A DNA stretch of 63,893 nt, counting the filler, from Octopus bimaculoides (Eukaryota): NCBI RefSeq assembly GCF_001194135.2. It is 4 parts of 4 records of this genome, joined end to end, with 100 filler letters (N's around TTAATTAATTAA, not from the genome) between each part and the next. Parts side by side here need not be neighbours in the genome. Positions count along the whole stretch, not along the records: positions 1 to 31,298 come from NC_069001.1; 3 more parts are not named here. One strand, written 5' to 3'. A program made the position numbers and the translations under genes. The notes under the pieces were generated by a model, which had not been told where the DNA came from, did not search any database, and saw only the letters and a list, made by a program, of their open reading frames with translations. Positions 475-20,030 of the stretch are shown here, in pieces; positions within the stretch are counted from its first letter, which is position 1; each line of letters opens with the position of its first letter.

Positions 475-1700
475 CAGAGCAATTCGCGCAGCTTACTTAC
501 CAGTTGTCTACCAACAACTTGTACACCTCTTTGGAAGGACCATCCTGTCCAGGAGCTTTACCATTGGAAAGTTTTTGATAGCAGTACTTATCTCTTCAAA
601 AGAAGGATCTTCCATTAGTTCTTCAATGATAAGCCACTGAAGAATTTCGTTGATCACTTCAGGATCGGTAGTGGATTCTTGATTTTATACAGATTTAAAG
701 AGTTCAGCACATTTTTCAGAATTTCGTCTTTGCTACTTAAGAGTTTTGACTGTCAAAAGAAAGAACAGGTTCTTTAGTACCTTTTCATGGACCAAACACA
801 CCTTTCAGATTGTCATACAATGCTCTCAAGTTGCGAGGGTCAGCAGCCTGTTATAAATCTTGGTTTTTTTTTCCTCACCGAGAATCTTTCCCTGCACGCA
901 GATTTTTCTGTGCAATGTTTCTAGAGGAGGTGTATCAGGATCTGAGTGTGGGTGAAGTTTAGTCTGAGACCCATGCTTTGTGTCTCTTCTGTATAGTTCC
1001 TACGAGAGCTTTTATTTGAGAATCATTCTCATAGAGCCCATCTTGGTGCTTGCATCTCACGAATTCTAGCGGTTCTTCAACAAATGATTTGATGCTGTCA
1101 CGAATATTGTGCCACAAAACTGTAGGGTCGTTCTTTTCCTTTACATTTTTAAGCTTTGAGTTTAAATACATTTCAAAACTTTTTGTCGCTTCTGGATTTT
1201 TTAAAGAAGTGGCATTCATTCTCGGATGTATACTGGACCTCAATGGCCTCTTTGCATACGGTTCGATTAATAACTTACTGCGAACTATTCCGTGATCCGA
1301 GTAACAATCAGGAGATTTGTGAGTTCTGGTTAATCTGAAATCAGTGCAATCCCTGTTCTTAGTTATATCATAGTCAAGCATGTGCCAGTTACCAGATCGG
1401 GGATGCTTCCATATGTTTTTTGTATTTATCTGCTTACTGAAACACTGTGTGTGATTGTTAAACCAATCGCAAACCTCTTTCATTGATCGTTTCTCTTCCA
1501 TACTTACCTATTACTCCTGACCACAACAATTTTTTGTCATAATTTTTCTTCCTATTCATTGCCCTCTCTTTCTGTTTCTCGTTCCAGCATCTGAAGACAC
1601 CAAAGCTGAGGCGGACATTTTTACAAACAATCCACAATCCGTTATTAGAGGGGGTAAAACCATTTAGCAGTTTGTTCTTTTTGCCTTTCATTTCCTACAA
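475..1700 (-). mobile_element. RTE-clade LINE relic (endonuclease C-terminus, linker, start of RT region)
   Basis: ORF 959..1501 contains WKHPRSGNWHMLDY, DCYSDHGIVRSKL and RCKHQD; the neighbouring frames are broken by stops and frameshifts. Confidence 0.75.
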
Positions 1701-4148: not shown

Positions 4149-4201
4149 CTATTCCATGTAGTCATTCGGATAGAGGTATTTTTGTAGTGGCCAAACCAGA
4201 T
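4149..4201 (-). CDS. TEX47: TEX47-like exon 8 (DLVWPLQKYLYPNDYME*)
   Basis: Acceptor ttttacttttcttttccag|AT; TAG stop at 4151-4149; family C-terminal (S)xxVWP motif. Confidence 0.87.
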
Positions 4202-7200
4202 CTGGAAAAGAAAAGTAAAAACAAAAACTGAAACAAACACATTAGCAATAACACGTACTATCATTAAAATTGAGGCTGTAATTGTTTTAGTTTCAACACA
4301 CAGTTTCATGTCAAGTCACTCACCGGGCAGGCACATCTTTTAAATCTCTATTTTGTCTTTTTATTAACAGAGAAATGGTATCCTAGTACCTTTCTGTTTA
4401 AGAACCACTGGGCCAAAACAAATAGCAGCAACAACTTACCAGAATGTAGAACAATATCAAAAGGTTTCGTAAACATGTCTATGAGTTGTTCAATTGTGAG
4501 CCCTTCTTCCTCGTTCTTCAATAAATAATGGATCAGGGCTACAATAGAGAAATGTCTAATTTGTAGTTGTAGTTGTAATGATCATGATGGTATGGATGGT
4601 GGTATGGATGGTGGTAGTGGTGGCAATGGCTAAGAAGGCGGAGGTGATGGTGATACCGTAAGTGACAGTGTTGGAGATGGTAGTGGTGAAGGTGGTAGTG
4701 GTGGCGATAGCAGTGGTGATGGTGGTGATAGAGGCGGTAGTTATGGTGGCGGTGGTGGTGGGGTGATGGCGTGGTGAAAACAGTGATGATGGTCGTGGCA
4801 GTAGTAGTGATAGTGGGCGATGTTGTTGGTGGCAGTGGCTGTGGTGACGGAAATGGTGGTGGTAGTAGCAATGACAATAGAGGTGGTGGTGGTTGTGGTG
4901 GTGGTGGTAGCGCTGATGCTGTTGGTGGTAGTGAGGGTGTTGGTGGTGGTAGCAGTGGAGGTGGTAATGATGGTGGTGGTGGTAGTAGGAGTGATGGCAG
5001 TAAAGGTGGTTGTGGTAGTGGTGGTAATGTTAGTAGTGCTGGAGGGACGAGGTAGTGATGGTGGTGTCAGCATTGTTAGTGCTCTTCCTATTGTTTTATA
5101 ATATGACCGCTTTGATGAAGCAGATCTATGACTAAAAGACATTCCAGCCATCATCCTCCCTCCAGCGTTTTATATGACTCATTATACAGAGTGTATTCCA
5201 CCCCAAAATGTACTCACATTTTGATTTCCCATAACTCATTAAATTTTTCATCTCCTTTCAGATCGAATTGATCCTAATAATGGGAGAAGTATGACTAAAT
5301 TTTAAAGACCGAAAATTTATCATAAAACGCTACTGCAAGCATGAAAACATCATGGAAGTGCAAAGACAATTTAGAAAATATTTCTACAAGGATCCAACAA
5401 TGTGTTGCATCATTGCTTGCATCTGAGACAAGTCTGAATCAGATGGAATTGTGCATGACATCTGTAAATAGCATTCAGAAGGATCACGGTCATCAACTGG
5501 CCCTGCAAAAGAAAAACAATTGCTGGAAACCCTCCACTGATTCCCACAAAAAGCTGTATGACAAATGGGCTGTGGGACAGGAATCCCCAAATCATTCCTA
5601 CTGAAAGCATGAAAACATCATGGAGGTGTAGAGACAATTCAGAAGATATTTTCTTAAAGATCCACTGTTTGCATCCGAAGTAAGTTTGAATTAGATGGAT
5701 ATGTGTATGACATCCACAAGTAGCATTCAGAAGGACCATGGCCATCAATCAACTGCACAGAGGAAAGCAATTGTTGGGAAACCCTCCATCGATCTCCACA
5801 GAAATCTGTATGACAAGTGGGTAATGAGACAGGAATCCCCAAAGCGTTCCTACTGGAAACATGAAACCATCATGGAGGTGTAAAGACACCTCCATGTCCC
5901 TCCATAGTCATCATGTCTTGTAAGCTTCTCTTGCTTGCTCTTCTCACCACTTCTTTCTTTCTCACTCTGTCCCAGTAAGAGATGTCCAGGACTGAATGCA
6001 GGCAGCATTAATGGAACACGACCAGTAACTGAGAGATCTTCGCTGTCTTCTTCCAGATTTCACAGACGTAGACGGCTGTTGGTATAACAATAGATGAGTA
6101 CAGCCACAGCTTCATCTTCTTATTGATGGTCTTGTTAATGTGGCTTGGTGTTTGTGTTTGTTCCCAGCCACCATTTGACGACTGGTGTTGGTTTGTTTAT
6201 GCCCCTGTAACTTAATATTTTGTCAAACGCAAATGATAGAATAAGTACTAGATGTATTAGAACTGAAGTCAATTCTCTCAAAGAAAACTTTTCAATGCAT
6301 TGCCCCAACATGGCCACAGTCAAATGACTGATGCAAATAAAATATACATAAATTCATAGCTGTGTCAATAGTTAGATATCGCTTTAGTATTTCAAATGCT
6401 GTGGAAACAAACGGTCCACCTTTGACCAGGGAAAAGGTTTTGAAGTGTGGGTTTGTTAAGCGGTTTGAGCAGGAATGGGGTGATGCTTGGATCCAATCAA
6501 TGAAGCTTACCTTGTTGGGGAAGTAGTGCTGGGTTTCTTGTGCTCATTGTTTCAAGAACTCTCTGAAAGTCACCCTGCAATGAGAATGGTACTCAGCTTA
6601 TATACGAATGTGTAGTATTCATACTTACATACATACATCCTATTTACATACATACATACATGCATAGATACATACATGCATAGATACATACATACATGCA
6701 CACATGCATACATGCATACATACATACATACATACATACATACATACATACATACATACATACATACGTACGTACGTACATACATACATACATACATCCT
6801 GTATACATAGATACATACATACATACGTACATACATACATACATACATACATACATACATTCATACATACACACACCTCACACACACTGAATACATGTAC
6901 TGAATACATGTGCAGTACTGATTATATGATGTGGTTGTAGAGTCAAGTTTTGACTTCTATTCCTAGCATGGTGGTATCTCGTTGTTATTGGCACTCCGTC
7001 GCTTACGACGTCGAGGGTTCCAGTTGATCCGATCAACGGAACAGCCTGCTCGTGAAATTAACAAAGGAATGACTCACTGACTACGGATCCAGGAAGGGTA
7101 AGTGAGATACTCAGTGAACAATTTAAAAGTGTATTCACTTCCCCACTTGGACACGTGCAGATAAAAATCCGGTTGAATTCTTTGGTATTGCAGGTGTAAA

Positions 7201-7399: not shown

Positions 7400-8006
7400 G
7401 CACTCCGTCGCAGGTTCCAGTTGATCCGATCAACGGAACAGCCTGCTCGTGAAATTAACGTACAAGTGGCTGAACACTCCACAGACACGTGTACCCTTAA
7501 CGTAGTTCTCGGGGAGATTCCGCGTGACACAGTGTGACAAGGCTGACCCTTTGAGTTAAAGGCACAACAGAAAGTTGTGGTGGAAGAGTACAGCAGGGTT
7601 CGCTACCATCCCCCTGCCGGAGCCTCGTAGAGCTTTAAGTGTTTTCGCTCAATAAACACTCACANNNNNNNNNNNNNNNNNNNNNNNNNNNNNNNNNNNN
7701 NNNNNNNNNNNNNNNNNNNNNNNNNNNNNNNNNNNNNNNNNNNNNNNNNNNNNNNNNNNNNNNNNNNNNNNNNNNNNNNNNNNNNNNNNNNNNNNNNNNN
7801 NNNNNNNNNNNNNNNNNNNNNNNNNNNNNNNNNNNNNNNNNNNNNNNNNNNNNNNNNNNNNNNNNNNNNNNNNNNNNNNNNNNNNNNNNNNNNNNNNNNN
7901 NNNNNNNNNNNNNNNNNNNNNNNNNNNNNNNNNNNNNNNNNNNNNNNNNNNNNNNNNNNNNNNNNNNNNNNNNNNNNNNNNNNNNNNNNNNNNNNNNNNN
8001 NNNNNN

Positions 8007-8044
<38 letters not shown>

Positions 8045-11000
8045 GTGCGCGTGTGTGTGTGTATACTAGATAACCTGTAACCTGTTGGGTTACCAATATT
8101 TCAAGGTACTGCGAATCCGTGGAATCTATGGTCCGATTTATGTGAAATCTTTTGTTATTCTGTGAGCATTCACATTTCAGTGTTACCTTACTTGCAAAGC
8201 ATTTTCCCCACTATACACTGGTTTTAGCTATTTATGAAGGTACCCACAAAAAACCATGTGTCTCAGTAATCCGTGGTCTGATTTATGCAAATCTTGTTTT
8301 ATAATGGTCTGTATTCATATGAGCATCCGATTCATGATGTCTCCTGCTTGTGTCTCTTTCTCTTGTTCACCAGATGCTCAGCACTTCAAGTGTCTGATTC
8401 CTGATCCCTTCTGCTTCTCTCTCTCTTTCTCTCTGTTCTACCAGACACTCAGTGGAGGCACAATGGCCCAGTGGTTAGGGCAGCGGACTCGCGGTCATAG
8501 AATCGCGGGTTTCTATTCCCAGACCGGGCGTTGTGAGTGTTTATTGAGCGAAAACACCTAAGAGCTCCACAAGGCTCCGGCAAGGGATGGTGGTGAACCC
8601 TGCTGTACTCTTTCACCACAATTTTCTCTCACTCTTACTTCCTGTTTCTGTTGTGCCTGTAATTCAAAGGGTCAGCGTTGTCACACTGTGTCACATTGAA
8701 TATCACCGAGAACTACGTTAAGGGTACACGTGTCTGTGGAGTGCTCAGCCACTTGCACGTTAATTTCACGAGCAGGCTGTTCTGTTGGTCGAATCAACTG
8801 GAACCCTCGACTTTGTAAGCGACAGAGTGCCAACAACAACCAGACACTCAGCCCTTGTTTTATCAGTCTCATTGACCTTTATATTCACATGCCTGTCCCT
8901 ATCAGAAATTTCTCAGAGTATCATCATCATCATCGTTTAACGTCTGCTTTCCATGCTAGCATGGGTTGGACGATTTGACTGAGGACTGGTGAAACCAGAT
9001 GGCTACACCAGGCTCCAATCTGATTTGGCAGAGTTTCTACAGCTGGATGCCCTTCCTAACGCCAACCACTCCGAGAGTGTAGTGGTTGCTTTTATGTGTC
9101 ACCCGCACGAAGGCCAGTCAGGTGGTACTGGCAACGGCCACGCTCAAAATGGTGTATTTTACGTGCCACCCACACAAGAGCCAGTCCTGGAGCACTGGCA
9201 ATGATCTCGCTCGAAAATCCTACGAAGGCCAGTCAGGCGGTACTGGCAACAGCCAGGCTCAAAACGGTGTATTTTATGTGCCACCTGCACAAGAGCCAGT
9301 CCAGGGGCACTGGCAATGATCTCGCTCGAAAATCCTTACACATGTCACGAGCACAAGTGCCAGAAAGGCGACACTGGGCACAGGTGCCATCCCGATACAA
9401 AACTTACATTTTGATTAAATATTTCTCTATAGTTAGTTAGTAATCAAAAGGTGTATAGATCGCAGCACGGCTTGGATAGTGGCACAACTTGTAATTTTAA
9501 CCCTTCCTAGCGACACACAAATATATATAATTATACATTTGTCTCTCTGTCTATCTGTATGTATGTACAATAACAATGATGACTAAAGTGTATATATTGC
9601 TAGAAAGCAGTTGAGTGCATCGAAAGAAGTTCAACTTACTTTATGTTGTTGGTTCAGGTGGGCTCCCAGAAGAAGGATCTGCTGAATGAGGTCGACTTGC
9701 AGTTTCTCAATAGTATCTAAAGTTTCGAAAACCTCCATGTTCTGAGAATGGATGTCCAGGAGACAGAAATGCATTTGTCTGAATAAGCGGAACACCTTTT
9801 TTTGGCGGTTAAGGGTTAATACCATTGGTTTGTAATTAGCAAAATATATAAAATAATTTTAAAAATATATAAAATGTAAAAAAAAAAACAAAAAAAAAAC
9901 AATTAGCAAAATATATAAAATAATAAAAAAAATATATAAAATGTAAAAAAACAAACAAAAAGAAATTAGCAAAATATATAAAATGATTTTTAAAATGGCA
10001 CCTGTGCTGGTGGCATGTAAAGAAAATAATTCAACCTCTGAACGTCGGACCTCACAGAGGCAAAGTGGCTGAGTACCTTTTGAGCTTTGGGCATGATGGG
10101 AGCAAAGTGACTGAGTCCCTTTCGAGCATTGGGCCTCATGGAAGCAAAGTGACTGAGCTCCTTTCGAGCATTGGGCCCCATGGAGGCAAAGTAGCTGAGT
10201 TCCTTTCGAGCATTGGGCCCATGGAGGCAAAGTGACTGAGTTCCTTTCAAGCGGGCCTCATGCAGGCAAAGTAGTTGAGTTCTGTTCCCTTGATAAAGTT
10301 CTGTATGCATTTTTATTTGTATTTTCTCAATGTGTATGTATGTGTGTGTGTGTGTGTGCGAGCTCGTGTATGCATGTGTGTGTGTGTGGAGAGAGAGGAA
10401 ATTGAGTCAACCTAGAAACTGAACCTGCAATAGCCAGTTATGAAGCTGCTGTACAATGAATTACATATGAAGCATCAATACAAAGGATACATCGTGAGAT
10501 ATAACGAGCAGCTTCACTCGATTAATTAGTTTTCCACCAATGGCAGACTTGAGATGCTGTATTAAGGCTGATATGTATTTCTCCGATGACTGTGAAATGA
10601 TACAAATTACAAAACCTCATTAAAAGGAAGACATAACACGTTTGTAAAGATTGCACTCACTCACGTACACACATACACACACACACACACACACAGAGTA
10701 CTGAAAGGGCAGGAAAGGGCCGATGAAATGACAGGGTGCAGTGGTTTCTATGCTTTCCTTAAGGACACTCACTGAATGAAGCGTTTGCATCTATGTCTTG
10801 ACAATGGAAAACTTCTCAGGGACGCCTTCAGTATCAAGAACGTATTCTTTTATTCTTTTACTTGTTTCAGTCATTTGACTGTGGCCATGCTGGAGTGCTA
10901 AATGTAGCCAAACAAATCGACCCCAGGACTTATTCTTTGTAAGCCTAATACTTATTCTCTTGGTCTCCCTTTGCCAAAGTGCTAAGTTACGGGGATGTAG

Positions 11001-13149
11001 ACACACCAACATCGGTTGTCAAGTAATGGTGGAGGGGATAAACACAGACACACATACATATATATACGATGGGATTCTTTCAGTTTCCATCTACTAAATC
11101 CACTCACAAGGCTTTGGTTGGCCCGAAGCTATAGCAGAAGACACTTGCCCAAGGTGCCATGCAATGGGACTGAACCTGAACCATGTAGTTGGGTAGCAAG
11201 CTTCTTACCACACAGCCACGCCTGTGGAAATGAAATATAAAAACAGATGACCAAGGTGACAGCTCAGTAGAATTATTCTTTTCTACTCTAGGCAGAAGGC
11301 CCAAAGTTTCAGGGGAGGGGGCCAGTCGATTAGATCGACCCCAGTACACAACTAGTACTTAATTTATCGACCCCAAAAGGGTGAAAGGTAAAGTCGACCT
11401 TGACACTTAGTAGAATTATTCAAGCATCAAACAGGGTGCCTTGTAGTATTTCTTTTGGATCTGTTTGTTCTGAGTTTAAATCCTGCCCCATCGCCTAGAA
11501 AACAGTGACATCCCTGTGGGGAGTTTTGAGTAACATAGGCACTGACATGGCTGATTGTGAGTGAAGGCACATGGCTGAGTGGTGAGGGTGTCGGATTCAT
11601 AACCATAAGATTGTGGTTTCAATCCCTGGACCAGGCAACGCATTGTGTTTTTGAGCAAAACACTTCATTTCATGTTGCTCCAGTCCACTCAGTTGGCAAA
11701 AAGGAGTAACCCTATGATGGAATGGCACCATCACCACCATCGCCACCACCACCCTACCACTACTACTACTACCACCATCACCACTACCACTACTGCCACC
11801 AGCACCACCACCACTACCACTACCATCACCACCAGCACTCCCTCTGCAGTCCTCTCCCCCCACCAAAAGAGTCAAGTAGATCAACCTACCTCCAGTACGA
11901 CAAAGAACTGCACCTGGTACATCACGAGGAGACCAGAAATTATCTCCCCTTCTTTTTCTCTTAAATATAGAATATCTTCTTGCAGATGACCTGTTAAGAA
12001 ATATTGACTCATATCAATATATATATGTGTGTGTGTATATATGTGCAGCCACAACAGTATACACACACACACACACACACATATACATATATAATAGGCA
12101 CAGGAGTGGCTGTGTGGTAAGTAGTTTGCTTACCTTGGTAGTAAGATCAGGCTGAAGAAGAGGTATCTGTCAGGAGACAGATTCATGAGAAGATGGAAGC
12201 CTGCGGCCAAGAAGCTGGGAGTGTTTGGCACCAGGTAAGTGGAGGCCAAAAACAAGGGAAAGAAAAAGCAAGGGGTCTACCCTGGTGGTCAGATGCCTAT
12301 CTGTCAGGAAAGTCATTACAAATTGCATCTGTAATGAGCAATGCTTTAATCGAACATTGTAAATATAATCAAATTATTATTGTATATTTAAAATTGTAAA
12401 TATTTAACCGATACAGCTACTTCACCCCTTTTATGTTTGTTATTTCTTTATTGCCCACAAGGGGCTAAACATAGAGGGGACAAACAAGGACAGACAAATG
12501 GATTAAGTCGATTATATCGACCCCCAGTGCATAACTGGTACTTAATTTATCGACCCCGAAAGGATGAAAGGCAAAGTCGACCTCGGCGGAATTTGAACTC
12601 AGAACGTAACGGCAGACGAAATACCGCTGAGCAATTCGCCCGGTGTGCTAACGGTTCTGCCAGCTTGCCTCCTTGAATGTCTGTCTTTTATGTCTGTCTT
12701 TCCTTGTTCGTCCCCTCTTTGTAATGCCTTCATGGCAAATCGTTAATGAAATAAAGTAGCTTGCTTACCAACCACGTGGTAACAAAAGTTCTGTCCATTT
12801 TTTAAGGGTTTAGGAGTCAGCAAACTAATAAAACAATATCTGATTTATTTAATCATTAATATAGTCACCAGCCTTCTCTAAGTGCCCTTTCCATCTGTCG
12901 ATGAGATCTTTAATGCCACAGTCATTACCAATGGTTGAATGCCAACAACGGCATGCATTTGGCAATATTCACAGCTCCTCAACAAGCTCTTGAGATTGGC
13001 TGCGTGCTTCTGGTCAGCATGTCTAAGGAGTTTTCAATTAAAGCCAAGTGTAATAGTTGGCATACAACTGTCAATTACATTCTGATCAATTCTATGCCCT
13101 AACCAGGAATATACTAATATACTGCTCAAGAATATAAATAAATGTGTGT

Positions 13150-13198
<49 letters not shown>

Positions 13199-13999
13199 CA
13201 TTACACGTACACATACTTGTCTTTGATATCACTTCTGACCTTTTGAAATCTCATGATCTAATTCAACATATTGGTAAAAATATCTGTGTAATCAATAAAT
13301 CAATAAAGACAAAATTCTATGACTGTGCAAAGTACAAGATATCGAACACACTTAGCAACTTTCCAATCTCAATAATCACTGGATTAATCGATGAGATTAA
13401 ATAATTCAAACTGTGCTTTCCTGTATTTTCTGCACCCACCCACTTCTTATTCTTTTACTCTTTTATTTGTTTCAGTCGTTTGACTGTGGCCACGCTGGAG
13501 CACCGCCTTTGGTCGAACGAATCGATCGTGGGACTTATTCTTTGTGCAAGCCTAGTACTTATTTTTTATTGGTCTCTTATGCCGAACCACTAAGTAACCA
13601 AGATGTAAACACACCGACATCGGTTGTCAAGTGATGGTGGAGGGACAAACACAGACACACACACAAATATACATACATAAATCCACATATACATACATAC
13701 ATATTTCAAAGATAGAAATTGAAAGAAACCCATTGTATATATATATATATATATATAATATATGACAAGATTCTTTCAGTTTCTGTCTTTGAAATCCACT
13801 CATGAGGCTTTGGTCGGCCCGAGGCTATAGTAGAAGACACTTGCCCAAAGTGCCACACATTGGGACTGAACCCGGAACCATGTGGTTGGGAAGCAAGCTA
13901 CTTACCATACATGCCTGTGCCTTAGATTGTTATTTTTTACTCTTTCTCCTTCTCTTACATACATTCATGCATACATGAATACCCACACATGTGTGTGTG

Positions 14000-14039
<40 letters not shown>

Positions 14040-14049
14040 NNNNNNNNNN

Positions 14050-14097
<48 letters not shown>

Positions 14098-14984
14098 CCA
14101 CCGATTGCATTCTGAAAGGGACACACCCTCTTCATCCAGATGGTGACCCCCTTTGTTCTATGTCAGCATGATATATTATGTGTATGTATGCATGTTGTCT
14201 TTTTAGGAGCAGAAATTTCTAGGAGTGGATTCCCAGTCCCCTCGCTGAGGAAATGGGATACAGAGTGAGGTGGGGGAGTTGTGAAAGGGATGCTGAAAGA
14301 TAAAAGGTTGAGTATGAAAGTGAAAAGAGGTGTGTATGAGGGCATGATTGTGCCGACAATGTTATATGGTGCAGGGATGTGGGGTCTGAGAGAGGCGGAA
14401 AGGAGGCAGCTAGATATATTTGAGATGAGATGTTTGATGGCTACGGTTGGTGTGACAAGGATGGACAGGATAAGGAACGAGGAGGTGCAAAGGAGAGGAG
14501 GAATGAGTGAAATCTAACAACCAGAATGGTTAGATGAATGTTGAGATGGTTTGGCCCACATGGAGAGGATGGATGAGGAGGAGATGGTAAGGAGGGTGAT
14601 GAAGGCAGAAGTGGTAGGCAGCAGAACCAGAGGCAGACCTCAGTTTGTGGGGATGGATGGAGTGAGGAAAGCCTTGGTGGTTAGAGGTGTTGGAGTGAGA
14701 GAGGCAAGAGAGTTTATAAATGATAAGAAAGATTGGAGAGTGCTTGTGGATGGATGAGTGAATTTGATGTTACTCAAAGGGGTACAGAACCAGCATGATA
14801 TGGTGGGGCTAAACCAGCATATGCTGTCAGGCCCCACTGCTGATATCGGGGTTTGTGTTCTGTCCTTTGACCCGAGCCTATGACAGGGCTCGCCTCTTTG
14901 GGCTGGGAAATAAATGGAGCGCCTGGTGTGTGTCTTGTTGTGGCTAACCCCTCCCTGGAGAATAGGCCTGGGTGTATGTGTATA

Positions 14985-16218: not shown

Positions 16219-16732
16219 GGATGGATGGATGGATAGATAGATAGAGAGAAGTAGATAGATAGACAGATAGATAGATAGATAGATGGATAGATAGACAGAT
16301 ATACTTATGCATACACACATGGACATGGACACACACACACACACACACACATATATGTATATACATATACACACATGCAAATCTATGTATGTACATATGT
16401 GTGTGTGTATGTGTGTATACACACACATTTCTATGTATATCTCACTGCCTTCACACACACACATACATCTATTCACAACCAGAAACAAACCTCAAAGACT
16501 TACTGAGAACTACTGATGGTTCGTCTGTTTTGTTCTTTATGTTCCCAATGTAGATCAAACGGTGAACAAGGCTGGCCTGCAACAGAGACAGAGGACGCAT
16601 GAAATCATCACCAGCATCTAAAAATAGGTACAAGGAGGAAATTAGGGGGTGAAATAGAGGGGCTGAACTGCAACAGGGTAAGGGTGACAAGAAGTCACTA
16701 TATTTTTGCTCCATACATACATACATACATAC

Positions 16733-16784
<52 letters not shown>

Positions 16785-17681
16785 GTGTATGTGTTCTTCC
16801 CTGCACCATTGCTTGACAACCAGTGTTGGTGTGTTTATGGGCCTGTAACTTAGCAGTTCAGCAAAAGAGACCGATAGAATAGGTACTAGGCTTACAAAGA
16901 ATAAGTCCTAAGATTGATTTCTTTGACTAAAAAAAAAAACCCTCCAAGGCTAGCCACAATCAACTCCAGCATGGCCACAATCAACTGACAGAAACAAGTG
17001 AAAAAATAAGGTTTGTTTCTGACCCCATAAGTCAGCAGTTCAACAAAAGACTGAGTACCAGACTTATAGAAATATGTCAGTCCTGGGGACGATTTGTTCG
17101 ACTAAAACCCTTCAAGGTGCTGCCCCAGCATGGCCACAGTCCAATGACTGGAACAAGTAAATGATAAGGAAGATTGAGAGAAAAATTCAGTCGTTTGACC
17201 AATCATAAATGTAAATTATTCTTCACACTCAAATTTTNNNNNNNNNNNNNNNNNNNNNNNNNNNNNNNNNNNNNNNNNNNNNNNNNNNNNNNNNNNNNNN
17301 NNNNNNNNNNNNNNNNNNNNNNNNNNNNNNNNNNNNNNNNNNNNNNNNNNNNNNNNNNNNNNNNNNNNNNNNNNNNNNNNNNNNNNNNNNNNNNNNNNNN
17401 NNNNNNNNNNNNNNNNNNNNNNNNNNNNNNNNNNNNNNNNNNNNNNNNNNNNNNNNNNNNNNNNNNNNNNNNNNNNNNNNNNNNNATCGACCCCGAAAGG
17501 ATAAAAAAAAAAAAATCAAAATTCAACCACGGTAGCATTCGAACTCAGAACGTAGGTATCACAAATATATTAATACCCAGCATATGTTTATACTTACACC
17601 TTCTCCAAATCTACTTCTTTCAATATCGTATAAAGAACGCCTGCTTTCTAGATCTGAGATTTCCAATGATGACATCGCCAT
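4149..17681 (-). CDS. TEX47: TEX47/C7orf62-like BLUF-fold protein (DYBLUP/MOT7-related), whole gene span, 8 coding exons, 242 aa
   Basis: Eight exons with GT-AG boundaries and matching phases join into one 729-nt ORF: MAMSSLEISDLESRRSLYDIERSRFGEG|ASLVHRLIYIGNIKNKTDEPSVVLS HLQEDILYLREKEGEIISGLLVMYQVQFFVVLE|SSEKYISALIQHLKSAIGGKLINRVKLLVISHD|VFRLFRQMHFCLLDIHSQNMEVFETLDTIEKLQVDLIQQILLLGAHLNQQHK|GDFQRVLETMSTRNPALLPQQA LIHYLLKNEEEGLTIEQLIDMFTKPFDIVLHSD LVWPLQKYLYPNDYME*. It is colinear with human TEX47 as I recall it (LLDRMFLVAKI; GEAVTGLLLIYP..LHILESS; IVVISHNIPMRLFMQW; NRPIHITLDSEVVWP). No database search was run. Confidence 0.88.
4440..4538 (-). CDS. TEX47: TEX47-like exon 7 (LIHYLLKNEEEGLTIEQLIDMFTKPFDIVLHS)
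   Basis: Acceptor tttctctattgtag|CC; donor TCTG|GTAAGT; 99 nt, phase 1 to 1. Confidence 0.87.
4560..5065. repeat. Degenerate (GGT/GAT)n trinucleotide tract
   Basis: Direct sequence; source of the spurious Thr/Gly/Val/His-rich ORFs. Confidence 0.9.
5187..5885 (+). mobile_element. Tc1/mariner relic (TIR plus N-terminal HTH region) with an internal tandem duplication
   Basis: Starts TA|CAGAGTG. YxKHENIMEVQRQFRxYF is typical of Tc1-like DUF4817 N-termini. The segment repeats at 5340, 5608 and 5860. Confidence 0.65.
5900..6125 (-). mobile_element. LINE (RTE-like) RT C-terminal fragment
   Basis: KLWLYSSIVIPTAVYVCEIWKKT...VFH*CCLHSVLDISYWDRV. Confidence 0.65.
6511..6574 (-). CDS. TEX47: TEX47-like exon 6 (GDFQRVLETMSTRNPALLPQQ)
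   Basis: Acceptor ccattctcattgcag|GGT; donor CAAG|GTAAGC; 64 nt, phase 0 to 1. Confidence 0.85.
6615..6875. repeat. (CATA)n microsatellite
   Basis: Direct sequence. Confidence 0.92.
7390..7663 (-). mobile_element. tRNA-derived SINE (family B), 5' part lost in the gap; further 3' fragment at about 6985-7062
   Basis: Reverse complement of 8540-8838. Confidence 0.8.
8453..8838 (+). mobile_element. Full-length tRNA-derived SINE (family B) with 13-bp TSD
   Basis: A-box-like TGGCCCAGTGG, B-box-like GGTTTCTATTCC, (CAA)n tail; accagacactcag duplicated at 8440-8452 and 8839-8851. Confidence 0.85.
8922..9395 (-). mobile_element. Dispersed retroposon 3' end with (ATG)n tail (family C); other copies at about 24540-24775(+), 25268-25320(+), 25468-25700(-), 38020-38560(-), 42350-42560(+), 50100-50262(+), 50580-50750(-), 53200-53320(+)
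   Basis: Shared core ctacagctggatgcccttcctaacgccaacc / ccaacccatgccagcatggaaa..gacgttaaatgatgatg in all copies; internal duplication of about 115 bp in this copy. Confidence 0.75.
9640..9795 (-). CDS. TEX47: TEX47-like exon 5 (VFRLFRQMHF...LGAHLNQQHK)
   Basis: Follows a U12 branch site and AG; 156 nt open; donor AAA|GTAAGT; overlaps the supplied ORF 9631..9825. Confidence 0.88.
9796..10490 (-). other. U12-type (minor spliceosome) GT-AG intron, intron 4 of the TEX47-like gene, 695 nt
   Basis: 5' splice site GTATCCTTT (10490-10482); branch site CCTTAAC (9814-9808); no polypyrimidine tract; first AG downstream of the branch (9797-9796) keeps the reading frame. Confidence 0.88.
10055..10285. 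repeat. 42-bp minisatellite, about 5.5 copies, inside the U12 intron
   Basis: caaagt starts at 10061, 10103, 10145, 10187, 10229 and 10268; unit ggcaaagtgactgagttcctttcgagcattgggccccatgga. Confidence 0.9.
10491..10589 (-). CDS. TEX47: TEX47-like exon 4 (SSEKYISALIQHLKSAIGGKLINRVKLLVISHD)
   Basis: Acceptor catttcacag|TCA; donor GAT|GTATCCTTT (U12 type); 99 nt, phase 0 to 0. Confidence 0.88.
10848..11224 (-). mobile_element. tRNA/CORE-like SINE (family D) with internal microsatellite
   Basis: Reverse complement of the 58633-59046 copy (GGAGTGGCTGTGTGGTAAG...CCTTGGGCAAGTGTCTT...GCATGGCCACAGTCAAATGACTGAAACAAGTAAAAG). Confidence 0.85.
11890..11990 (-). CDS. TEX47: TEX47-like exon 3 (HLQEDILYLREKEGEIISGLLVMYQVQFFVVLE)
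   Basis: Acceptor tatttcttaacag|GT; donor GAG|GTAGGT; 101 nt, phase 1 to 0; SGLLVMYQVQFFVVLE aligns without gaps to the BLUF TGALFYSQGVFFQWLE segment. Confidence 0.88.
12445..12672 (-). mobile_element. tRNA-derived SINE (family A); partial copies at about 11270-11400, 20750-20900, 32480-32690, 32720-32886
   Basis: Core atcgaccccgaaaggatgaaaggcaaagtcgacctcggcggaatttgaactcagaacg shared between copies. Confidence 0.85.
12860..12950 (-). mobile_element. mariner transposase C-terminal relic
   Basis: GIKDLIDRWKGHLEKAGDYIND* resembles the mariner GIxxLxxRWxKCxxxxGDY terminus. Confidence 0.5.
13452..13922 (-). mobile_element. SINE family D
   Basis: Same consensus as 58633-59046, reverse strand. 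Confidence 0.85.
14230..14970 (+). mobile_element. 5'-truncated RTE-clade LINE (RT C-terminus, 3' UTR, microsatellite tail)
   Basis: IVPTMLYGAGMWGLREAERRQLDIFEMRCL...RIRNEEV...W(F/L)AHMERMDEE...RGRP in ORFs 14281..14517 and 14551..14757. Confidence 0.85.
16504..16576 (-). CDS. TEX47: TEX47-like exon 2 (ASLVHRLIYIGNIKNKTDEPSVVL)
   Basis: Acceptor cctctgtctctgttgcag|GCC; donor CTCA|GTAAGT; 73 nt, phase 0 to 1; carries the BLUF beta1-like RLIY motif. Confidence 0.85.
17598..17681 (-). CDS. TEX47: TEX47-like exon 1 (MAMSSLEISDLESRRSLYDIERSRFGEG)
   Basis: ATG at 17681-17679, 84 nt open, ends GGT|GTAAGT (phase 0). Confidence 0.8.
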
Positions 17682-17765: not shown

Positions 17766-18320
17766 GATACATAACAGTCCCGCATTACAAAATATATTTC
17801 TAGATATATCGCAGTTCTATAAATCTACAGACAAGATCAGTCGATTGATGCGCGACTTTTGACTAATTTTGCAATTAATTCTTAGTGTAGAATAAATAAA
17901 ATGAAAAACTAATGATTTATTTCGTTGTTTCAGAAATAACGATGTTAGGAGTGGAGCATGAATTACAATGCAGTGTTTGTATGAATTACCTCTCTTTAAT
18001 TTAGCAATTTCTGACTGCGTTACGAAAACAATTGGTTGTTATTAACAATAGCAGTGGTTCCCAACCATTCTTAGCTTACGGACCTCTTTGATTCCTATTT
18101 AACTCGAATGGATCCTCGTAGCCTTAATCCTGTTGTATAGAGATTGTTTAAATAATAAAAAAAAGGTGTTAAAATATTATTTTGTTTATTGTAGAAGTAC
18201 AATCAAATTTTGGGTCGATTTGTTCGACTAAAGGTGGTGCTCCAGCATGGCCGCAGTCAAATGACTGAAACAAGTAAAAGAATAAAAAGAGTAATACAGT
18301 TGTCACATAGAATAGAAACC

Positions 18321-18450
18321 GTGACCGGAAGATTGATTCCACTTTACGTCGCTTTGCTTTAGTAATCAGGAGGTTCTATGCAGGGGAGATAATTCAATAT
18401 ATCATAATTTTTCGGACATCGAATTAAGACGACGAAGTTCTGTGGTAAGT
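18321..18450 (+). promoter_or_regulatory. Putative promoter / non-coding first exon of PDRG1
   Basis: ETS-type CCGGAAG at 18325-18331, CpGs retained, strong donor GTG|GTAAGT at 18444/18445; no PDRG1-like coding sequence here. Assignment to PDRG1 is inference. Confidence 0.4.
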
Positions 18451-20030
18451 GCTTGCTCTGGATATTTTAATTGAAATCTTTTATATTATTTGCGTTGAAT
18501 AATTTGTTTATGATATATTATATTTTTACAGATATCGGGTCCTTTTTTTTTAAGTTTAAAAGTATAGTTTTTATGCTACGGAAGTTATTCTGTGTAATTT
18601 CTTAAACGACGTAAATATTTCAGCTGCGATGTAACATGATTTCAGAATGGAATTAAGTAACCTTGTAATTAATTATTGTATTTGAATCATTCATTTGTTT
18701 TTGTGCCATTGATTTATTTATGTATGATATATTATATTTTTTATGGACATTGGGTCTTTCTTTTACGTTGGAATATATATTTTATGCTACGTAAATTCTT
18801 CAACGTCACTCCTACACGTTTCGCTCGTCCATATTAAGGTCTCGAAATAACTTAAATTACCGGCATTCTTTCGAAGAATGCCTAATTACCAAATAATCGA
18901 AATTAAAGAGAAAAGAAAAATACTCGGGAACTTTTGAAGTTTTTGTGGAGCTCGTGTTTCGGCGGAGGTAAAGAATACGTACACCACCCGTTTGCGGCGT
19001 AGCCAAAACCCTAACCCGTAGCCACCTGGGGTACGTATTCTTTACTTTCGCCGGGGTTTCCTTTTCTCGAAGGCCAGAAGCCCAGCCGGTGGAGATGGAG
19101 TATATGTAATCTGGGTATACCCCCCCCCTNNNNNNNNNNNNNNNNNNNNNNNNNNNNNNNNNNNNNNNNNNNNNNNNNNNNNNNNNNNNNNNNNNNNNNN
19201 NNNNNNNNNNNNNNNNNNNNNNNNNNNNNNNNNNNNNNNNNNNNNNNNNNNNNNNNNNNNNNNNNNNNNNNNNNNNNNNNNNNNNNNNNNNNNNNNNNNN
19301 NNNNNNNNNNNNNNNNNNNNNNNNNNNNNNNNNNNNNNNNNNNNNNNNNNNNNNNNNNNNNNNNNNNNNNNNNNNNNNNNNNNNNNNNNNNNNNNNNNNN
19401 NNNNNNNNNNNNNNNNNNNNNNNNNNNNNNNNNNNNNNNNNNNNNNNNNNNNNNNNNNNNNNNNNNNNNNNNNNNNNNNNNNNNNNNNNNNNNNNNNNNN
19501 NNNNNNNNNNNNNNNNNNNNNNNNNNNNNNNNNNNNNNNNNNNNNNNNNNNNNNNNNNNNNNNNNNNNNNNNNNNNNNNNNNNNNNNNNNNNNNNNNNNN
19601 NNNNNNNNNNNNNNNNNNNNNNNNNNNNNNNNNNNNNNNNNNNNNNNNNNNNNNNNNNNNNNNNNNNNNNNNNNNNNNNNNNNNNNNNNNNNNNNNNNNN
19701 NNNNNNNNNNNNNNNNNNNNNNNNNNNNNNNNNNNNNNNNNNNNNNNNNNNNNNNNNNNNNNNNNNNNNNNNNNNNNNNNNNNNNNNNNNNNNNNNNNNN
19801 NNNNNNNNNNNNNNNNNNNNNNNNNNNNNNNNNNNNNNNNNNNNNNNNNNNNNNNNNNNNNNNNNNNNNNNNNNNNNNNNNNNNNNNNNNNNNNNNNNNN
19901 NNNNNNNNNNNNNNNNNNNNNNNNNNNNNNNNNNNNNNNNNNNNNNNNNNNNNNNNNNNNNNNNNNNNNNNNNNNNNNNNNNNNNNNNNNNNNNNNNNNN
20001 NNNNNNNNNNNNNNNNNNNNNNNNNNNNNN

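What the first reader, a model, noticed from the sequence alone, without database searches (positions are those of the whole stretch)
9796..10490. U12-type minor-spliceosome intron in the TEX47-like gene
Seen: donor GAT|GTATCCTTTG, branch CCTTAAC with the branch A 13 nt from the 3' end, and an A-run instead of a polypyrimidine tract before the AG. This junction keeps the frame and restores the family motif SHD-VF-RLF. Known: these are diagnostic U12 signals; minor introns are well under 1% of introns and can be rate-limiting. Standard gene predictors would probably use the out-of-phase TTCAG at 9779 and mis-model the gene. Inference: an ancient intron position and possible control point.
Basis: partly seen in the sequence, partly recalled or inferred. 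Interest (0 to 1): 0.7.

Follow-up and report, generated by a model that had tools for sequence, protein, structure and literature searches.

The report
Ancient U12 intron in octopus TEX47
The fourth intron of the Octopus bimaculoides TEX47/DYBLUP gene is a textbook minor-spliceosome (U12-type) intron that sits at the same codon boundary in sponge, sea anemone, abalone and octopods; it is real and old, but it is an ordinary member of a well-known intron class and is already correctly spliced in the public annotation.

Summary
On the minus strand, intron 10490..9796 (695 nt, phase 0) begins GAT|GTATCCTTTG. It carries CCCTTAAC with the branch A 13 nt from the 3' end, and it ends in A7-G with no pyrimidine tract. 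It is intron 4 of a complete 8-exon, 242-aa TEX47/DYBLUP gene. My spliced model is identical to RefSeq XP_014779514.1 (Octopus bimaculoides), so existing annotation already uses this junction.

Exact exon-intron maps of 10 loci gave 72 introns. An intron sits at this codon boundary in 7 loci: three Octopus species, Argonauta, Haliotis (AT-AC subtype), Nematostella and the sponge Corticium. All seven have U12 donor and branch signals, and none of the other 65 introns does. The intron is absent in Lottia, amphioxus and sturgeon.

The intron is thus a pre-bilaterian U12 intron with subtype switching and lineage-specific losses, which is a known pattern. Splicing by the minor spliceosome and any rate-limiting or regulatory role were not tested. 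It is a new member of a known kind, of low interest.

The parts
9796..10490 (-). Intron 4 of TEX47/DYBLUP: U12-type, GT-AG subtype, 695 nt, phase 0
   Evidence: It is the only one of the gene's 7 introns with U12 signals.
10482..10490 (-). U12 5' splice site GTATCCTTT (9/9 to /RTATCCTTT), preceded by exon base T at -1 (10491)
   Evidence: Consensus from PMC2846911; -1U excess from PMC7367187. Identical in O. sinensis, O. vulgaris and Argonauta.
9808..9815 (-). Branch-site motif CCCTTAAC (7/8 to TCCTTAAC). The presumed branch A is 9809, 13 nt from the 3' end (9810 if the first A is used)
   Evidence: Conserved as CCCTTAAC in two other Octopus species and as CCCTTGAC in Argonauta.
9796..9803 (-). 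3' splice site: A7 run ending in AG, with no polypyrimidine tract (pyrimidine fraction 0.33 over -15..-4)
   Evidence: The other six introns of the gene have 0.58-0.92.
10491..10589 (-). Exon 4 (99 nt, phase 0/0), encoding SSEKYISALIQHLKSAIGGKLINRVKLLVISHD
9640..9795 (-). Exon 5 (156 nt), encoding VFRLFRQMHF...NQQHK, followed by a classical GTAAGT donor
17598..17681 (-). Exon 1 (ATG at 17681-17679)
16504..16576 (-). Exon 2. Isoform X2 starts at an in-frame ATG at 16600-16598, just upstream
11890..11990 (-). Exon 3
6511..6574 (-). Exon 6
4440..4538 (-). Exon 7
4149..4201 (-). Exon 8, including the TAG stop at 4151-4149

Best explanation
Window 10490..9796 (minus strand) is intron 4 of the Octopus bimaculoides TEX47/DYBLUP gene. 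It is a U12-type intron of the GT-AG subtype, removed by the minor spliceosome.

Inferred mechanism, from the established model of minor splicing and not tested here:
- The U11/U12 di-snRNP recognises the 5' splice site GTATCCTTT and the branch site CCCTTAAC together.
- U6atac then replaces U11 at the 5' splice site.
- The branch A (9809 or 9810) attacks the donor.
- The AG 13 nt downstream is chosen by its short distance from the branch, not through a polypyrimidine tract and U2AF.

The intron was already present, as a U12-type intron at this phase-0 codon boundary, before sponges, cnidarians and bilaterians diverged. It has since switched terminal dinucleotides in at least one lineage (AT-AC in Haliotis, GT-AG elsewhere). 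It has been deleted precisely in Lottia, amphioxus and sturgeon.
For: Shown:
1. Donor 9/9, branch site 7/8 at 13 nt, pyrimidine fraction 0.33 and T at -1. These match the published definition of U12 introns: /RTATCCTTT, UCCUUAACU, no pyrimidine-rich region (PMC2846911), and an excess of U at -1 (PMC7367187).
2. This junction gives the best fit to the Pfam TEX47 profile at 50.8 bits. The only alternative with good U2 signals (10464/9779) scores 38.4 bits, and 10490/9742 scores 21.8 bits.
3. The resulting 242-aa protein is identical to RefSeq XP_014779514.1.
4. Internal control: the gene's six other introns start GTAAGT, GTAGGT or GTAAGC and have pyrimidine-rich 3' ends.
5. Comparative evidence: across 72 exactly mapped introns in 10 loci, all 7 introns at this position have U12 signals. 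The donor is 9/9 in six loci. The sponge has GTATCTTT, the permitted +6 C-to-T variant. The branch site is at least 7/8 at 10-17 nt in all seven. None of the other 65 introns reaches 8/9 on the donor. Fisher p = 7e-10, or 1e-6 if only four independent lineages are counted.
6. Both splice ends are kept although intron length ranges from 113 nt to 11.8 kb. The O. bimaculoides intron aligns to the first ~210 and last ~470 nt of the 10.7-11.8 kb O. vulgaris and O. sinensis introns.
7. Octopus sinensis and Nematostella are among the species in a published intronIC survey of minor introns, which reports that molluscs are relatively rich in them (PMC10639083).
Against: - No transcript reads were available, so the junction rests on homology and on annotated models whose evidence I could not inspect.
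- Dependence on the minor spliceosome is inferred from sequence only.
- No formal intronIC score was computed.
- Phase 0 is the least common phase for U12 introns, about 22% (PMC10639083). That is atypical but not contrary.
- The branch motif starts with C rather than the consensus T.
- In Argonauta the branch-to-3'ss distance is 17 nt and the 3' end is more pyrimidine-rich, which is less typical.
- The octopod protein is one residue shorter than its homologues at the junction, so a 3-nt boundary shift occurred at some time.
- The profile separates the 10490 donor from the 10481 donor by only 1.1 bits. The choice of donor therefore rests on the splice signals.
Confidence: 0.93

Rival explanations
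1. The same GT-AG boundaries are used, but the intron is removed by the major (U2-type) spliceosome, either as a converted or 'hybrid' intron or through dual use.
For: The termini are GT-AG, which both spliceosomes can use. Phase-0 U12 introns are thought to be the ones most prone to minor-to-major conversion (PMC7367187). Some sites with U12 consensus are reported to be spliced by both machineries (PMC10853781 abstract). The Argonauta 3' end is fairly pyrimidine-rich.
Against: The donor has T, C, C at +4 to +6. Among the 65 U2-type introns of these genes, 53 have G at +5 and 44 have A at +4. The -1 base is T, not G. The 3' end is an A-run with pyrimidine fraction 0.33. The full U12 donor and branch site have been kept in lineages separated since before the bilaterians arose, which conversion would have eroded.
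Confidence: 0.04
2. The main mRNA uses a different junction. One candidate is the U2-like pair, donor TAT|GTAATT at 10464 with acceptor TTATTCAG| at 9779, which is in frame and gives ...SHDVSFVLMLHIQMHF.... The other is donor TTT|GTATTG at 10481 with the 9796 acceptor, which adds VSF.
For: Both are in frame and free of stops. The 9779 acceptor has a good pyrimidine tract. The 10481 variant loses only 1.1 bits against the TEX47 profile.
Against: The 10464/9779 variant loses 12.4 bits and destroys the conserved R-L-[FY]. That pair is out of frame or absent in O. sinensis, O. vulgaris and Argonauta. The 10481 donor lacks G at +5 and would have to pair with an acceptor that has no pyrimidine tract. 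It would put 5 residues between HD and RLF, where homologues have 3. RefSeq and three other annotations use 10490/9796.
Confidence: 0.02
3. The motifs are a chance resemblance in a repeat-rich, AT-rich intron and have no bearing on how it is spliced.
For: GTATCCTT occurs at about the frequency expected from base composition in the window: 2 found against about 1.2 expected.
Against: The joint placement has a probability of about 1e-7. The same signals recur at the same codon boundary in six other loci from four or more independent lineages, and in none of 65 control introns.
Confidence: 0.01

Closest known systems
U12-type (minor-spliceosome) introns, GT-AG subtype, as defined by Burge/Sheth-type rules and by intronIC (for example human UFD1 and RNF121, listed in PMC7367187)
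   Same: It has the 5' splice site /GTATCCTTT, a TCCTTAAC-like branch site 10-17 nt from the 3' end, no polypyrimidine tract and U at -1. It is a single minor intron among major introns, and its position is deeply conserved.
   Different: It is in phase 0, the under-represented phase. The first base of the branch motif is C rather than T. An A7 run lies directly before the AG. The host gene, TEX47/DYBLUP, is not a minor-intron gene in the chordates sampled (amphioxus, sturgeon), because the intron was lost there.
AT-AC to GT-AG subtype switching and precise loss of orthologous U12 introns (PMC2846911, PMC2831892, PMC7367187, PMC10639083)
   Same: The Haliotis orthologue is AT-AC (GAT|ATATCCTTTT...TTCCTTAAC...CAC|ATT), while octopods, Nematostella and Corticium are GT-AG. 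Lottia, Branchiostoma and Acipenser have lost the intron cleanly. Loss by deletion is reported as the dominant mode.
   Different: No minor-to-major conversion was seen at this position in the 10 loci sampled. The octopods show a one-codon length change at the junction. PMC10639083 says that the shifting of an intron's boundaries (intron sliding) is at most very rare.
TEX47 / C7orf62 / DYBLUP / MOT7, a BLUF-domain protein associated with inner-arm dynein f/I1 (PMC7909887; Pfam PF24787)
   Same: The host gene is a full-length orthologue of 242 aa, named TEX47 in RefSeq, and it matches PF24787. The U12 intron splits the conserved SHD|[IV]xxRL[FY] segment.
   Different: Nothing in the DYBLUP literature that I could search mentions its intron types.

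Membership tests
U12-type (minor) intron | 5' splice site matching /RTATCCTTT (one C at +5 or +6 may be T) | tested here: met
   GTATCCTTT at 10490-10482, 9/9. Rule from PMC2846911.
U12-type (minor) intron | Branch-site motif TCCTTAAC / TCCTTRAY | tested here: met
   CCCTTAAC at 9815-9808, 7/8. Only the first, least constrained base differs.
U12-type (minor) intron | Short, constrained distance from the branch A to the 3' splice site (roughly 10-20 nt; the range is from my own knowledge of the literature) | tested here: met
   13 nt in the window. The six orthologous introns have 10-17 nt.
U12-type (minor) intron | No polypyrimidine tract upstream of the 3' splice site | tested here: met
   Pyrimidine fraction 0.33 over -15..-4, with an A7 run. 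The gene's other introns have 0.58-0.92.
U12-type (minor) intron | Terminal dinucleotides GT-AG or AT-AC | tested here: met
   GT-AG in the window. The Haliotis orthologue is AT-AC.
U12-type (minor) intron | Orthologous introns in other lineages are also U12-type | tested here: met
   Six further loci have U12 signals at the same phase-0 codon boundary, against 0 of 65 other introns.
U12-type (minor) intron | Classifier score: intronIC U12 probability above 90% | not tested
Only consensus-match counts were computed.
U12-type (minor) intron | The junction is observed in transcripts | tested here: inconclusive
   The spliced protein is identical to RefSeq XP_014779514.1, and the same junction is used in the O. 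vulgaris, O. sinensis and Argonauta models. The evidence behind those models could not be inspected, and no RNA-seq was available.
U12-type (minor) intron | Excision depends on U11, U12, U4atac and U6atac snRNPs | not testable with these tools
   This needs an experiment. That the host has minor splicing is suggested only by the literature: Octopus sinensis is among the species compared for minor-intron conservation, and molluscs are reported as relatively rich in minor introns (PMC10639083).
U2-type (major) intron | GTRAGT-like donor (G at +5, often G at -1) and a polypyrimidine tract before YAG | tested here: not met
   +4 to +6 is TCC and -1 is T. The 3' end is an A-run. Of the 65 control introns, 53 have G at +5.
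TEX47 / DYBLUP protein family (Pfam PF24787) | Significant match to the PF24787 profile above its gathering score, and orthology to named TEX47 proteins | tested here: met
   The two exons flanking the intron alone give 50.8 bits against a cut-off of 25. The full protein is identical to 'testis-expressed protein 47 isoform X1 [Octopus bimaculoides]'. There are 47 family members with E <= 1e-5.

The most novel reading that the evidence does not exclude
The TEX47/DYBLUP minor intron has been kept by selection, not by inertia, since before sponges and eumetazoans split. It is in phase 0, the phase thought most prone to conversion, and it sits inside the conserved SHD|IxxRL[FY] core of the BLUF-like domain. 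On this reading, slow or regulated minor splicing (intron retention) gates production of this dynein-f/I1-associated protein during spermiogenesis or ciliogenesis. The lineages that lost the intron (chordates, Lottia) would then have rewired that control.
Probability: 0.08. Interest if true: 0.5.

Novelty: new member of a known kind. Interest (0 to 1): 0.2.

Why it matters
If accepted, this adds TEX47/DYBLUP to the genes that carried a minor intron in the last common ancestor of animals. It is a compact example of three known behaviours of U12 introns within one gene family:
- conservation of position and type from sponge to octopus;
- AT-AC/GT-AG subtype switching;
- clean loss in chordates and a limpet.

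In practice it shows that the public octopus gene models are right at this junction. It also offers an easy test locus for measuring minor-intron retention in cephalopod testis RNA-seq. It does not reveal a new mechanism. Genome-wide classifiers such as intronIC have already been run on Octopus sinensis and Nematostella, so this intron is very probably already in those unlabelled catalogues.

Tried and rejected
- Word-index protein search with the 85-aa junction peptide found nothing. The exhaustive HMMER search was needed instead.
- Passing unspliced frames to Pfam failed because of stop codons.
- My first two spliced-mapping scripts missed most junctions, because HSP ends ran into intron sequence or split codons translated by accident. 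A seed-and-back-off version gave complete, canonical structures for all 10 loci.
- Four genomic look-ups returned no record: Mya, Tubulanus, Lingula and Acipenser isoform X2.
- I listed all 38 in-frame GT-AG, GC-AG and AT-AC junctions between the two exons. All but the U12 pair were rejected on profile score and on lack of conservation.
- A chance origin of the motifs was considered and rejected.
- Rfam found no RNA family in the window.
- The three other RTATCCTT occurrences (26294 +, 1916 +, 3157 -) are not at the ends of recognisable coding exons.
- Literature searches for TEX47 together with U12 or 'minor intron' found nothing. The one supplement of PMC10639083 that is held as text has no gene-level list.

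Full report
**1. The observation.**
- Exon sequence ...CTCGTTATATCTCACGAT is followed at 10490 by GTATCCTTTG.
- Near the other end the intron reads ...GGTATTAACCCTTAACCGCCAAAAAAAG, and the exon resumes at 9795 with GTGTTCCGCTTATTCAG.
- CCCTTAAC occupies 9815-9808. Its second A (9809) is 13 nt from the last intron base (9796).
- The seven bases before the terminal G are all A.
- The intron is 695 nt and lies between codons (phase 0).

GTATCCTT on its own is not above chance: two copies occur in both strands of the 31 kb, where base composition predicts about 1.2. The placement is what is improbable. A full donor match sits exactly where protein homology stops, and CCTTAAC sits 8-20 nt before the AG where homology resumes. 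From base composition that combination has a probability of about 1e-7.

**2. The gene.**
The two flanking exons translate to SSEKYISALIQHLKSAIGGKLINRVKLLVISHD | VFRLFRQMHFCLLDIHSQNMEVFETLDTIEKLQVDLIQQILLLGAHLNQQHK. This peptide matches Pfam TEX47 (PF24787) as one uninterrupted stretch, at 50.8 bits and E = 2e-13.

An exhaustive HMMER search found a 242-aa protein that is 98% identical over the 85-aa query. It is annotated in Octopus vulgaris and O. sinensis and is 96% identical to the full window protein. Mapping it to the window gave a complete eight-exon gene on the minus strand, from ATG at 17681 to TAG at 4151-4149. The exons are 17681-17598, 16576-16504, 11990-11890, 10589-10491, 9795-9640, 6574-6511, 4538-4440 and 4201-4149.

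The spliced translation is identical, residue for residue, to RefSeq XP_014779514.1, 'testis-expressed protein 47 isoform X1 [Octopus bimaculoides]'. The window is therefore O. bimaculoides, and the public model already uses the 10491^9795 junction. Isoform X2 differs only by an alternative start just upstream of exon 2.

TEX47/C7orf62 is the animal orthologue of DYBLUP/MOT7, a BLUF-domain protein that links inner-arm dynein f/I1 to its tether complex (PMC7909887).

**3. Is this the junction?**
I listed all 38 in-frame, stop-free GT-AG, GC-AG and AT-AC junctions between the two exons and scored the plausible ones against the TEX47 profile:

| Junction (donor/acceptor) | Bits |
|---|---|
| 10490/9796 (U12 pair) | 50.8 |
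| 10481/9796 (adds VSF) | 49.7 |
| 10473/9779 | 38.5 |
| 10464/9779 (the only alternative with decent U2 signals) | 38.4 |
| 10505/9796 | 33.3 |
| 10490/9742 | 21.8 |

Homology thus fixes the acceptor at 9796. It cannot by itself choose between the donors at 10490 and 10481. That choice rests on the signals. The 9796 acceptor has no pyrimidine tract and lies 13 nt from a U12 branch motif, so it needs a U12 donor. The 10481 site (TTT|GTATTG) is a poor U2 donor.

The 10464/9779 pair is not conserved. In O. sinensis and O. vulgaris it is out of frame, and in Argonauta the acceptor is absent.

**4. Internal control.**
The six other introns of the gene begin GTAAGT (four), GTAGGT or GTAAGC. Their pyrimidine fractions over -15..-4 are 0.58-0.92, against 0.33 for intron 4.

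**5. Comparative test.**
I fetched genomic loci for nine homologues and derived exact exon-intron structures, all with canonical termini. With the window this gives 72 introns. An intron lies at the same phase-0 boundary, after the D of SHD, in seven loci:

| Species | Donor | Branch motif | Distance (nt) | Length | Subtype |
|---|---|---|---|---|---|
| O. bimaculoides | GAT\|GTATCCTTT | CCCTTAAC | 13 | 695 nt | GT-AG |
| O. sinensis | GAT\|GTATCCTTT | CCCTTAAC | 12 | 11.8 kb | GT-AG |
| O. vulgaris | GAT\|GTATCCTTT | CCCTTAAC | 12 | 10.8 kb | GT-AG |
| Argonauta hians | GAT\|GTATCCTTT | CCCTTGAC | 17 | 549 nt | GT-AG |
| Haliotis rufescens | GAT\|ATATCCTTT | TCCTTAAC | 11 | 1936 nt | AT-AC (ends AC\|ATT) |
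| Nematostella vectensis | GAT\|GTATCCTTT | TTCTTGAC | 10 | 999 nt | GT-AG |
| Corticium candelabrum (sponge) | GAT\|GTATCTTTA | ACCTTGAC | 11 | 113 nt | GT-AG |

The sponge donor is the permitted variant in which one C at +5 or +6 is T (PMC2846911). Human UFD1 has the same variant (PMC7367187).

Scored in the same way, all seven introns have a branch match of at least 7/8 at 10-17 nt. Six have a 9/9 donor. None of the other 65 introns reaches 8/9 on the donor, and only one reaches 7/8 on the branch motif, at 35 nt. Fisher's exact test gives 7e-10, or 1e-6 if the cephalopods are counted as one lineage. All seven have T at -1, the base reported to be in excess at U12 donors (PMC7367187).

Lottia gigantea, Branchiostoma floridae and Acipenser ruthenus read straight through the site in a single exon, so the intron was deleted there.

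Between Octopus species the intron ends are homologous while the interior differs by about 10 kb.

**6. Mechanism.**
Shown here: the sequence anatomy, the reading frame, the conservation of position and the conservation of type.

Inferred from the established model of minor splicing:
- The U11/U12 di-snRNP recognises GTATCCTTT and CCCTTAAC together.
- U6atac replaces U11 at the donor.
- The bulged branch A attacks the donor.
- The 3' AG is selected by its short distance from the branch, not through a pyrimidine tract.

Not shown: actual dependence on the minor spliceosome, and any kinetic or regulatory effect. The general claim that minor introns can be rate-limiting is in the literature (for example the abstracts listed). 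The largest survey, however, argues that neutral processes explain much of minor-intron evolution (PMC10639083).

**7. Comparison with what is known, and novelty.**
Every defining sequence feature of U12-type introns that could be tested was met (see the membership table). Phase 0 is the rarer phase for this class, about 22% (PMC10639083), but it is not excluded.

Subtype switching, clean loss and deep conservation are all documented behaviours (PMC2846911, PMC7367187, PMC10639083). intronIC has been run on more than 3000 genomes, including Octopus sinensis and Nematostella, so this intron is very probably in those catalogues already.

I found no paper that links TEX47/DYBLUP with a minor intron. 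It is not a minor-intron gene in the chordates sampled. I therefore rate it a new member of a known kind, of low interest.

**8.
- 'Gene predictors would mis-model': contradicted by four independent annotations.
- 'Control point': untested.
- 'Restores the family motif': essentially right. However, the family has three residues between HD and RL[FY], and the octopods have two. A one-codon change therefore happened at the junction in the octopod lineage.

**9. Limits.**
- No RNA-seq and no intronIC were available.
- No squid, Nautilus, bivalve, annelid, brachiopod, echinoderm or tetrapod locus was examined.
- Consensus-match counts stand in for a trained classifier.

Noticed in passing
window 9795/10491 junction; alignment A1, columns ~165-175: Octopod TEX47 proteins (O. 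bimaculoides, O. vulgaris/sinensis, Argonauta) read SHD-VF-RLF. Every other homologue has three residues there (SHD-IPQ-RLY and similar). A one-codon deletion or a 3-nt shift of the splice boundary therefore happened exactly at the U12 junction in the octopod lineage. [quoted passage not shown]
   Followed up: partly
window 9796-10490 compared with L001 15213-26987 and L002 11714-22466: The orthologous intron is 695 nt in O. bimaculoides but 11.8 kb in O. sinensis and 10.8 kb in O. vulgaris. The window's intron aligns to the first ~210 and last ~470 nt of the long ones. About 10 kb was therefore inserted or deleted in the middle without touching the splice signals.
   Followed up: partly
window 10057-10272, 9834-9996 and 10667-10695: Intron 4 contains a 42-nt tandem repeat (5.2 copies, 84% matches) and a 67-nt AT-rich repeat (2.5 copies). 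An (AC)n microsatellite lies in intron 3, just upstream of exon 4. CA/TG microsatellites are very common across the window and account for many spurious ORFs.
   Followed up: no
L004 1-5135 (-) and L005 1426-2547 (-): A gene encoding ankyrin repeats plus a G-patch domain lies next to, or overlaps, the 5' part of TEX47 in both Haliotis and Branchiostoma. This suggests old microsynteny. I did not check whether it is present beside the octopus gene.
   Followed up: no
L006, L007, L005, L009 compared with the mollusc loci: Most TEX47 intron positions and phases are shared from sponge to vertebrates. A phase-2 intron about 15 codons upstream of the U12 site is present in sponge, Nematostella, amphioxus and sturgeon, but absent in all molluscs sampled. 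A phase-0 intron about 33 codons downstream is present in sponge, Nematostella and amphioxus only.
   Followed up: partly
window 16600-16577 (-): RefSeq isoform X2 (XP_014779515.1, 222 aa) starts at an in-frame ATG immediately upstream of exon 2 (MRPLSLLQ|ASLVH...). It replaces exon 1 and does not involve the U12 intron.
   Followed up: yes
window 14281-14757 (+), 962-1507 (-), and repeated copies near 18172-18375, 13413-13634, 6295-6543 and 27200: There are open frames that look like transposon remnants. One is a reverse-transcriptase-like C-terminal piece inside intron 2, and another is an endonuclease-like piece downstream of the gene. A short element encoding '...[17 protein letters not shown]...' recurs several times. 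This is judged by eye only and was not checked against any library.
   Followed up: no
window 26294 (+), 1916 (+), 3157 (-): Three further RTATCCTT matches. None lies at the end of a recognisable coding exon, and their number fits chance expectation.
   Followed up: partly
window 7665-8006, 14040-14049, 17238-17485, 19130-20030: Assembly gaps (runs of N) lie in introns 5, 2 and 1 and upstream of the gene. None touches an exon or intron 4.
   Followed up: yes
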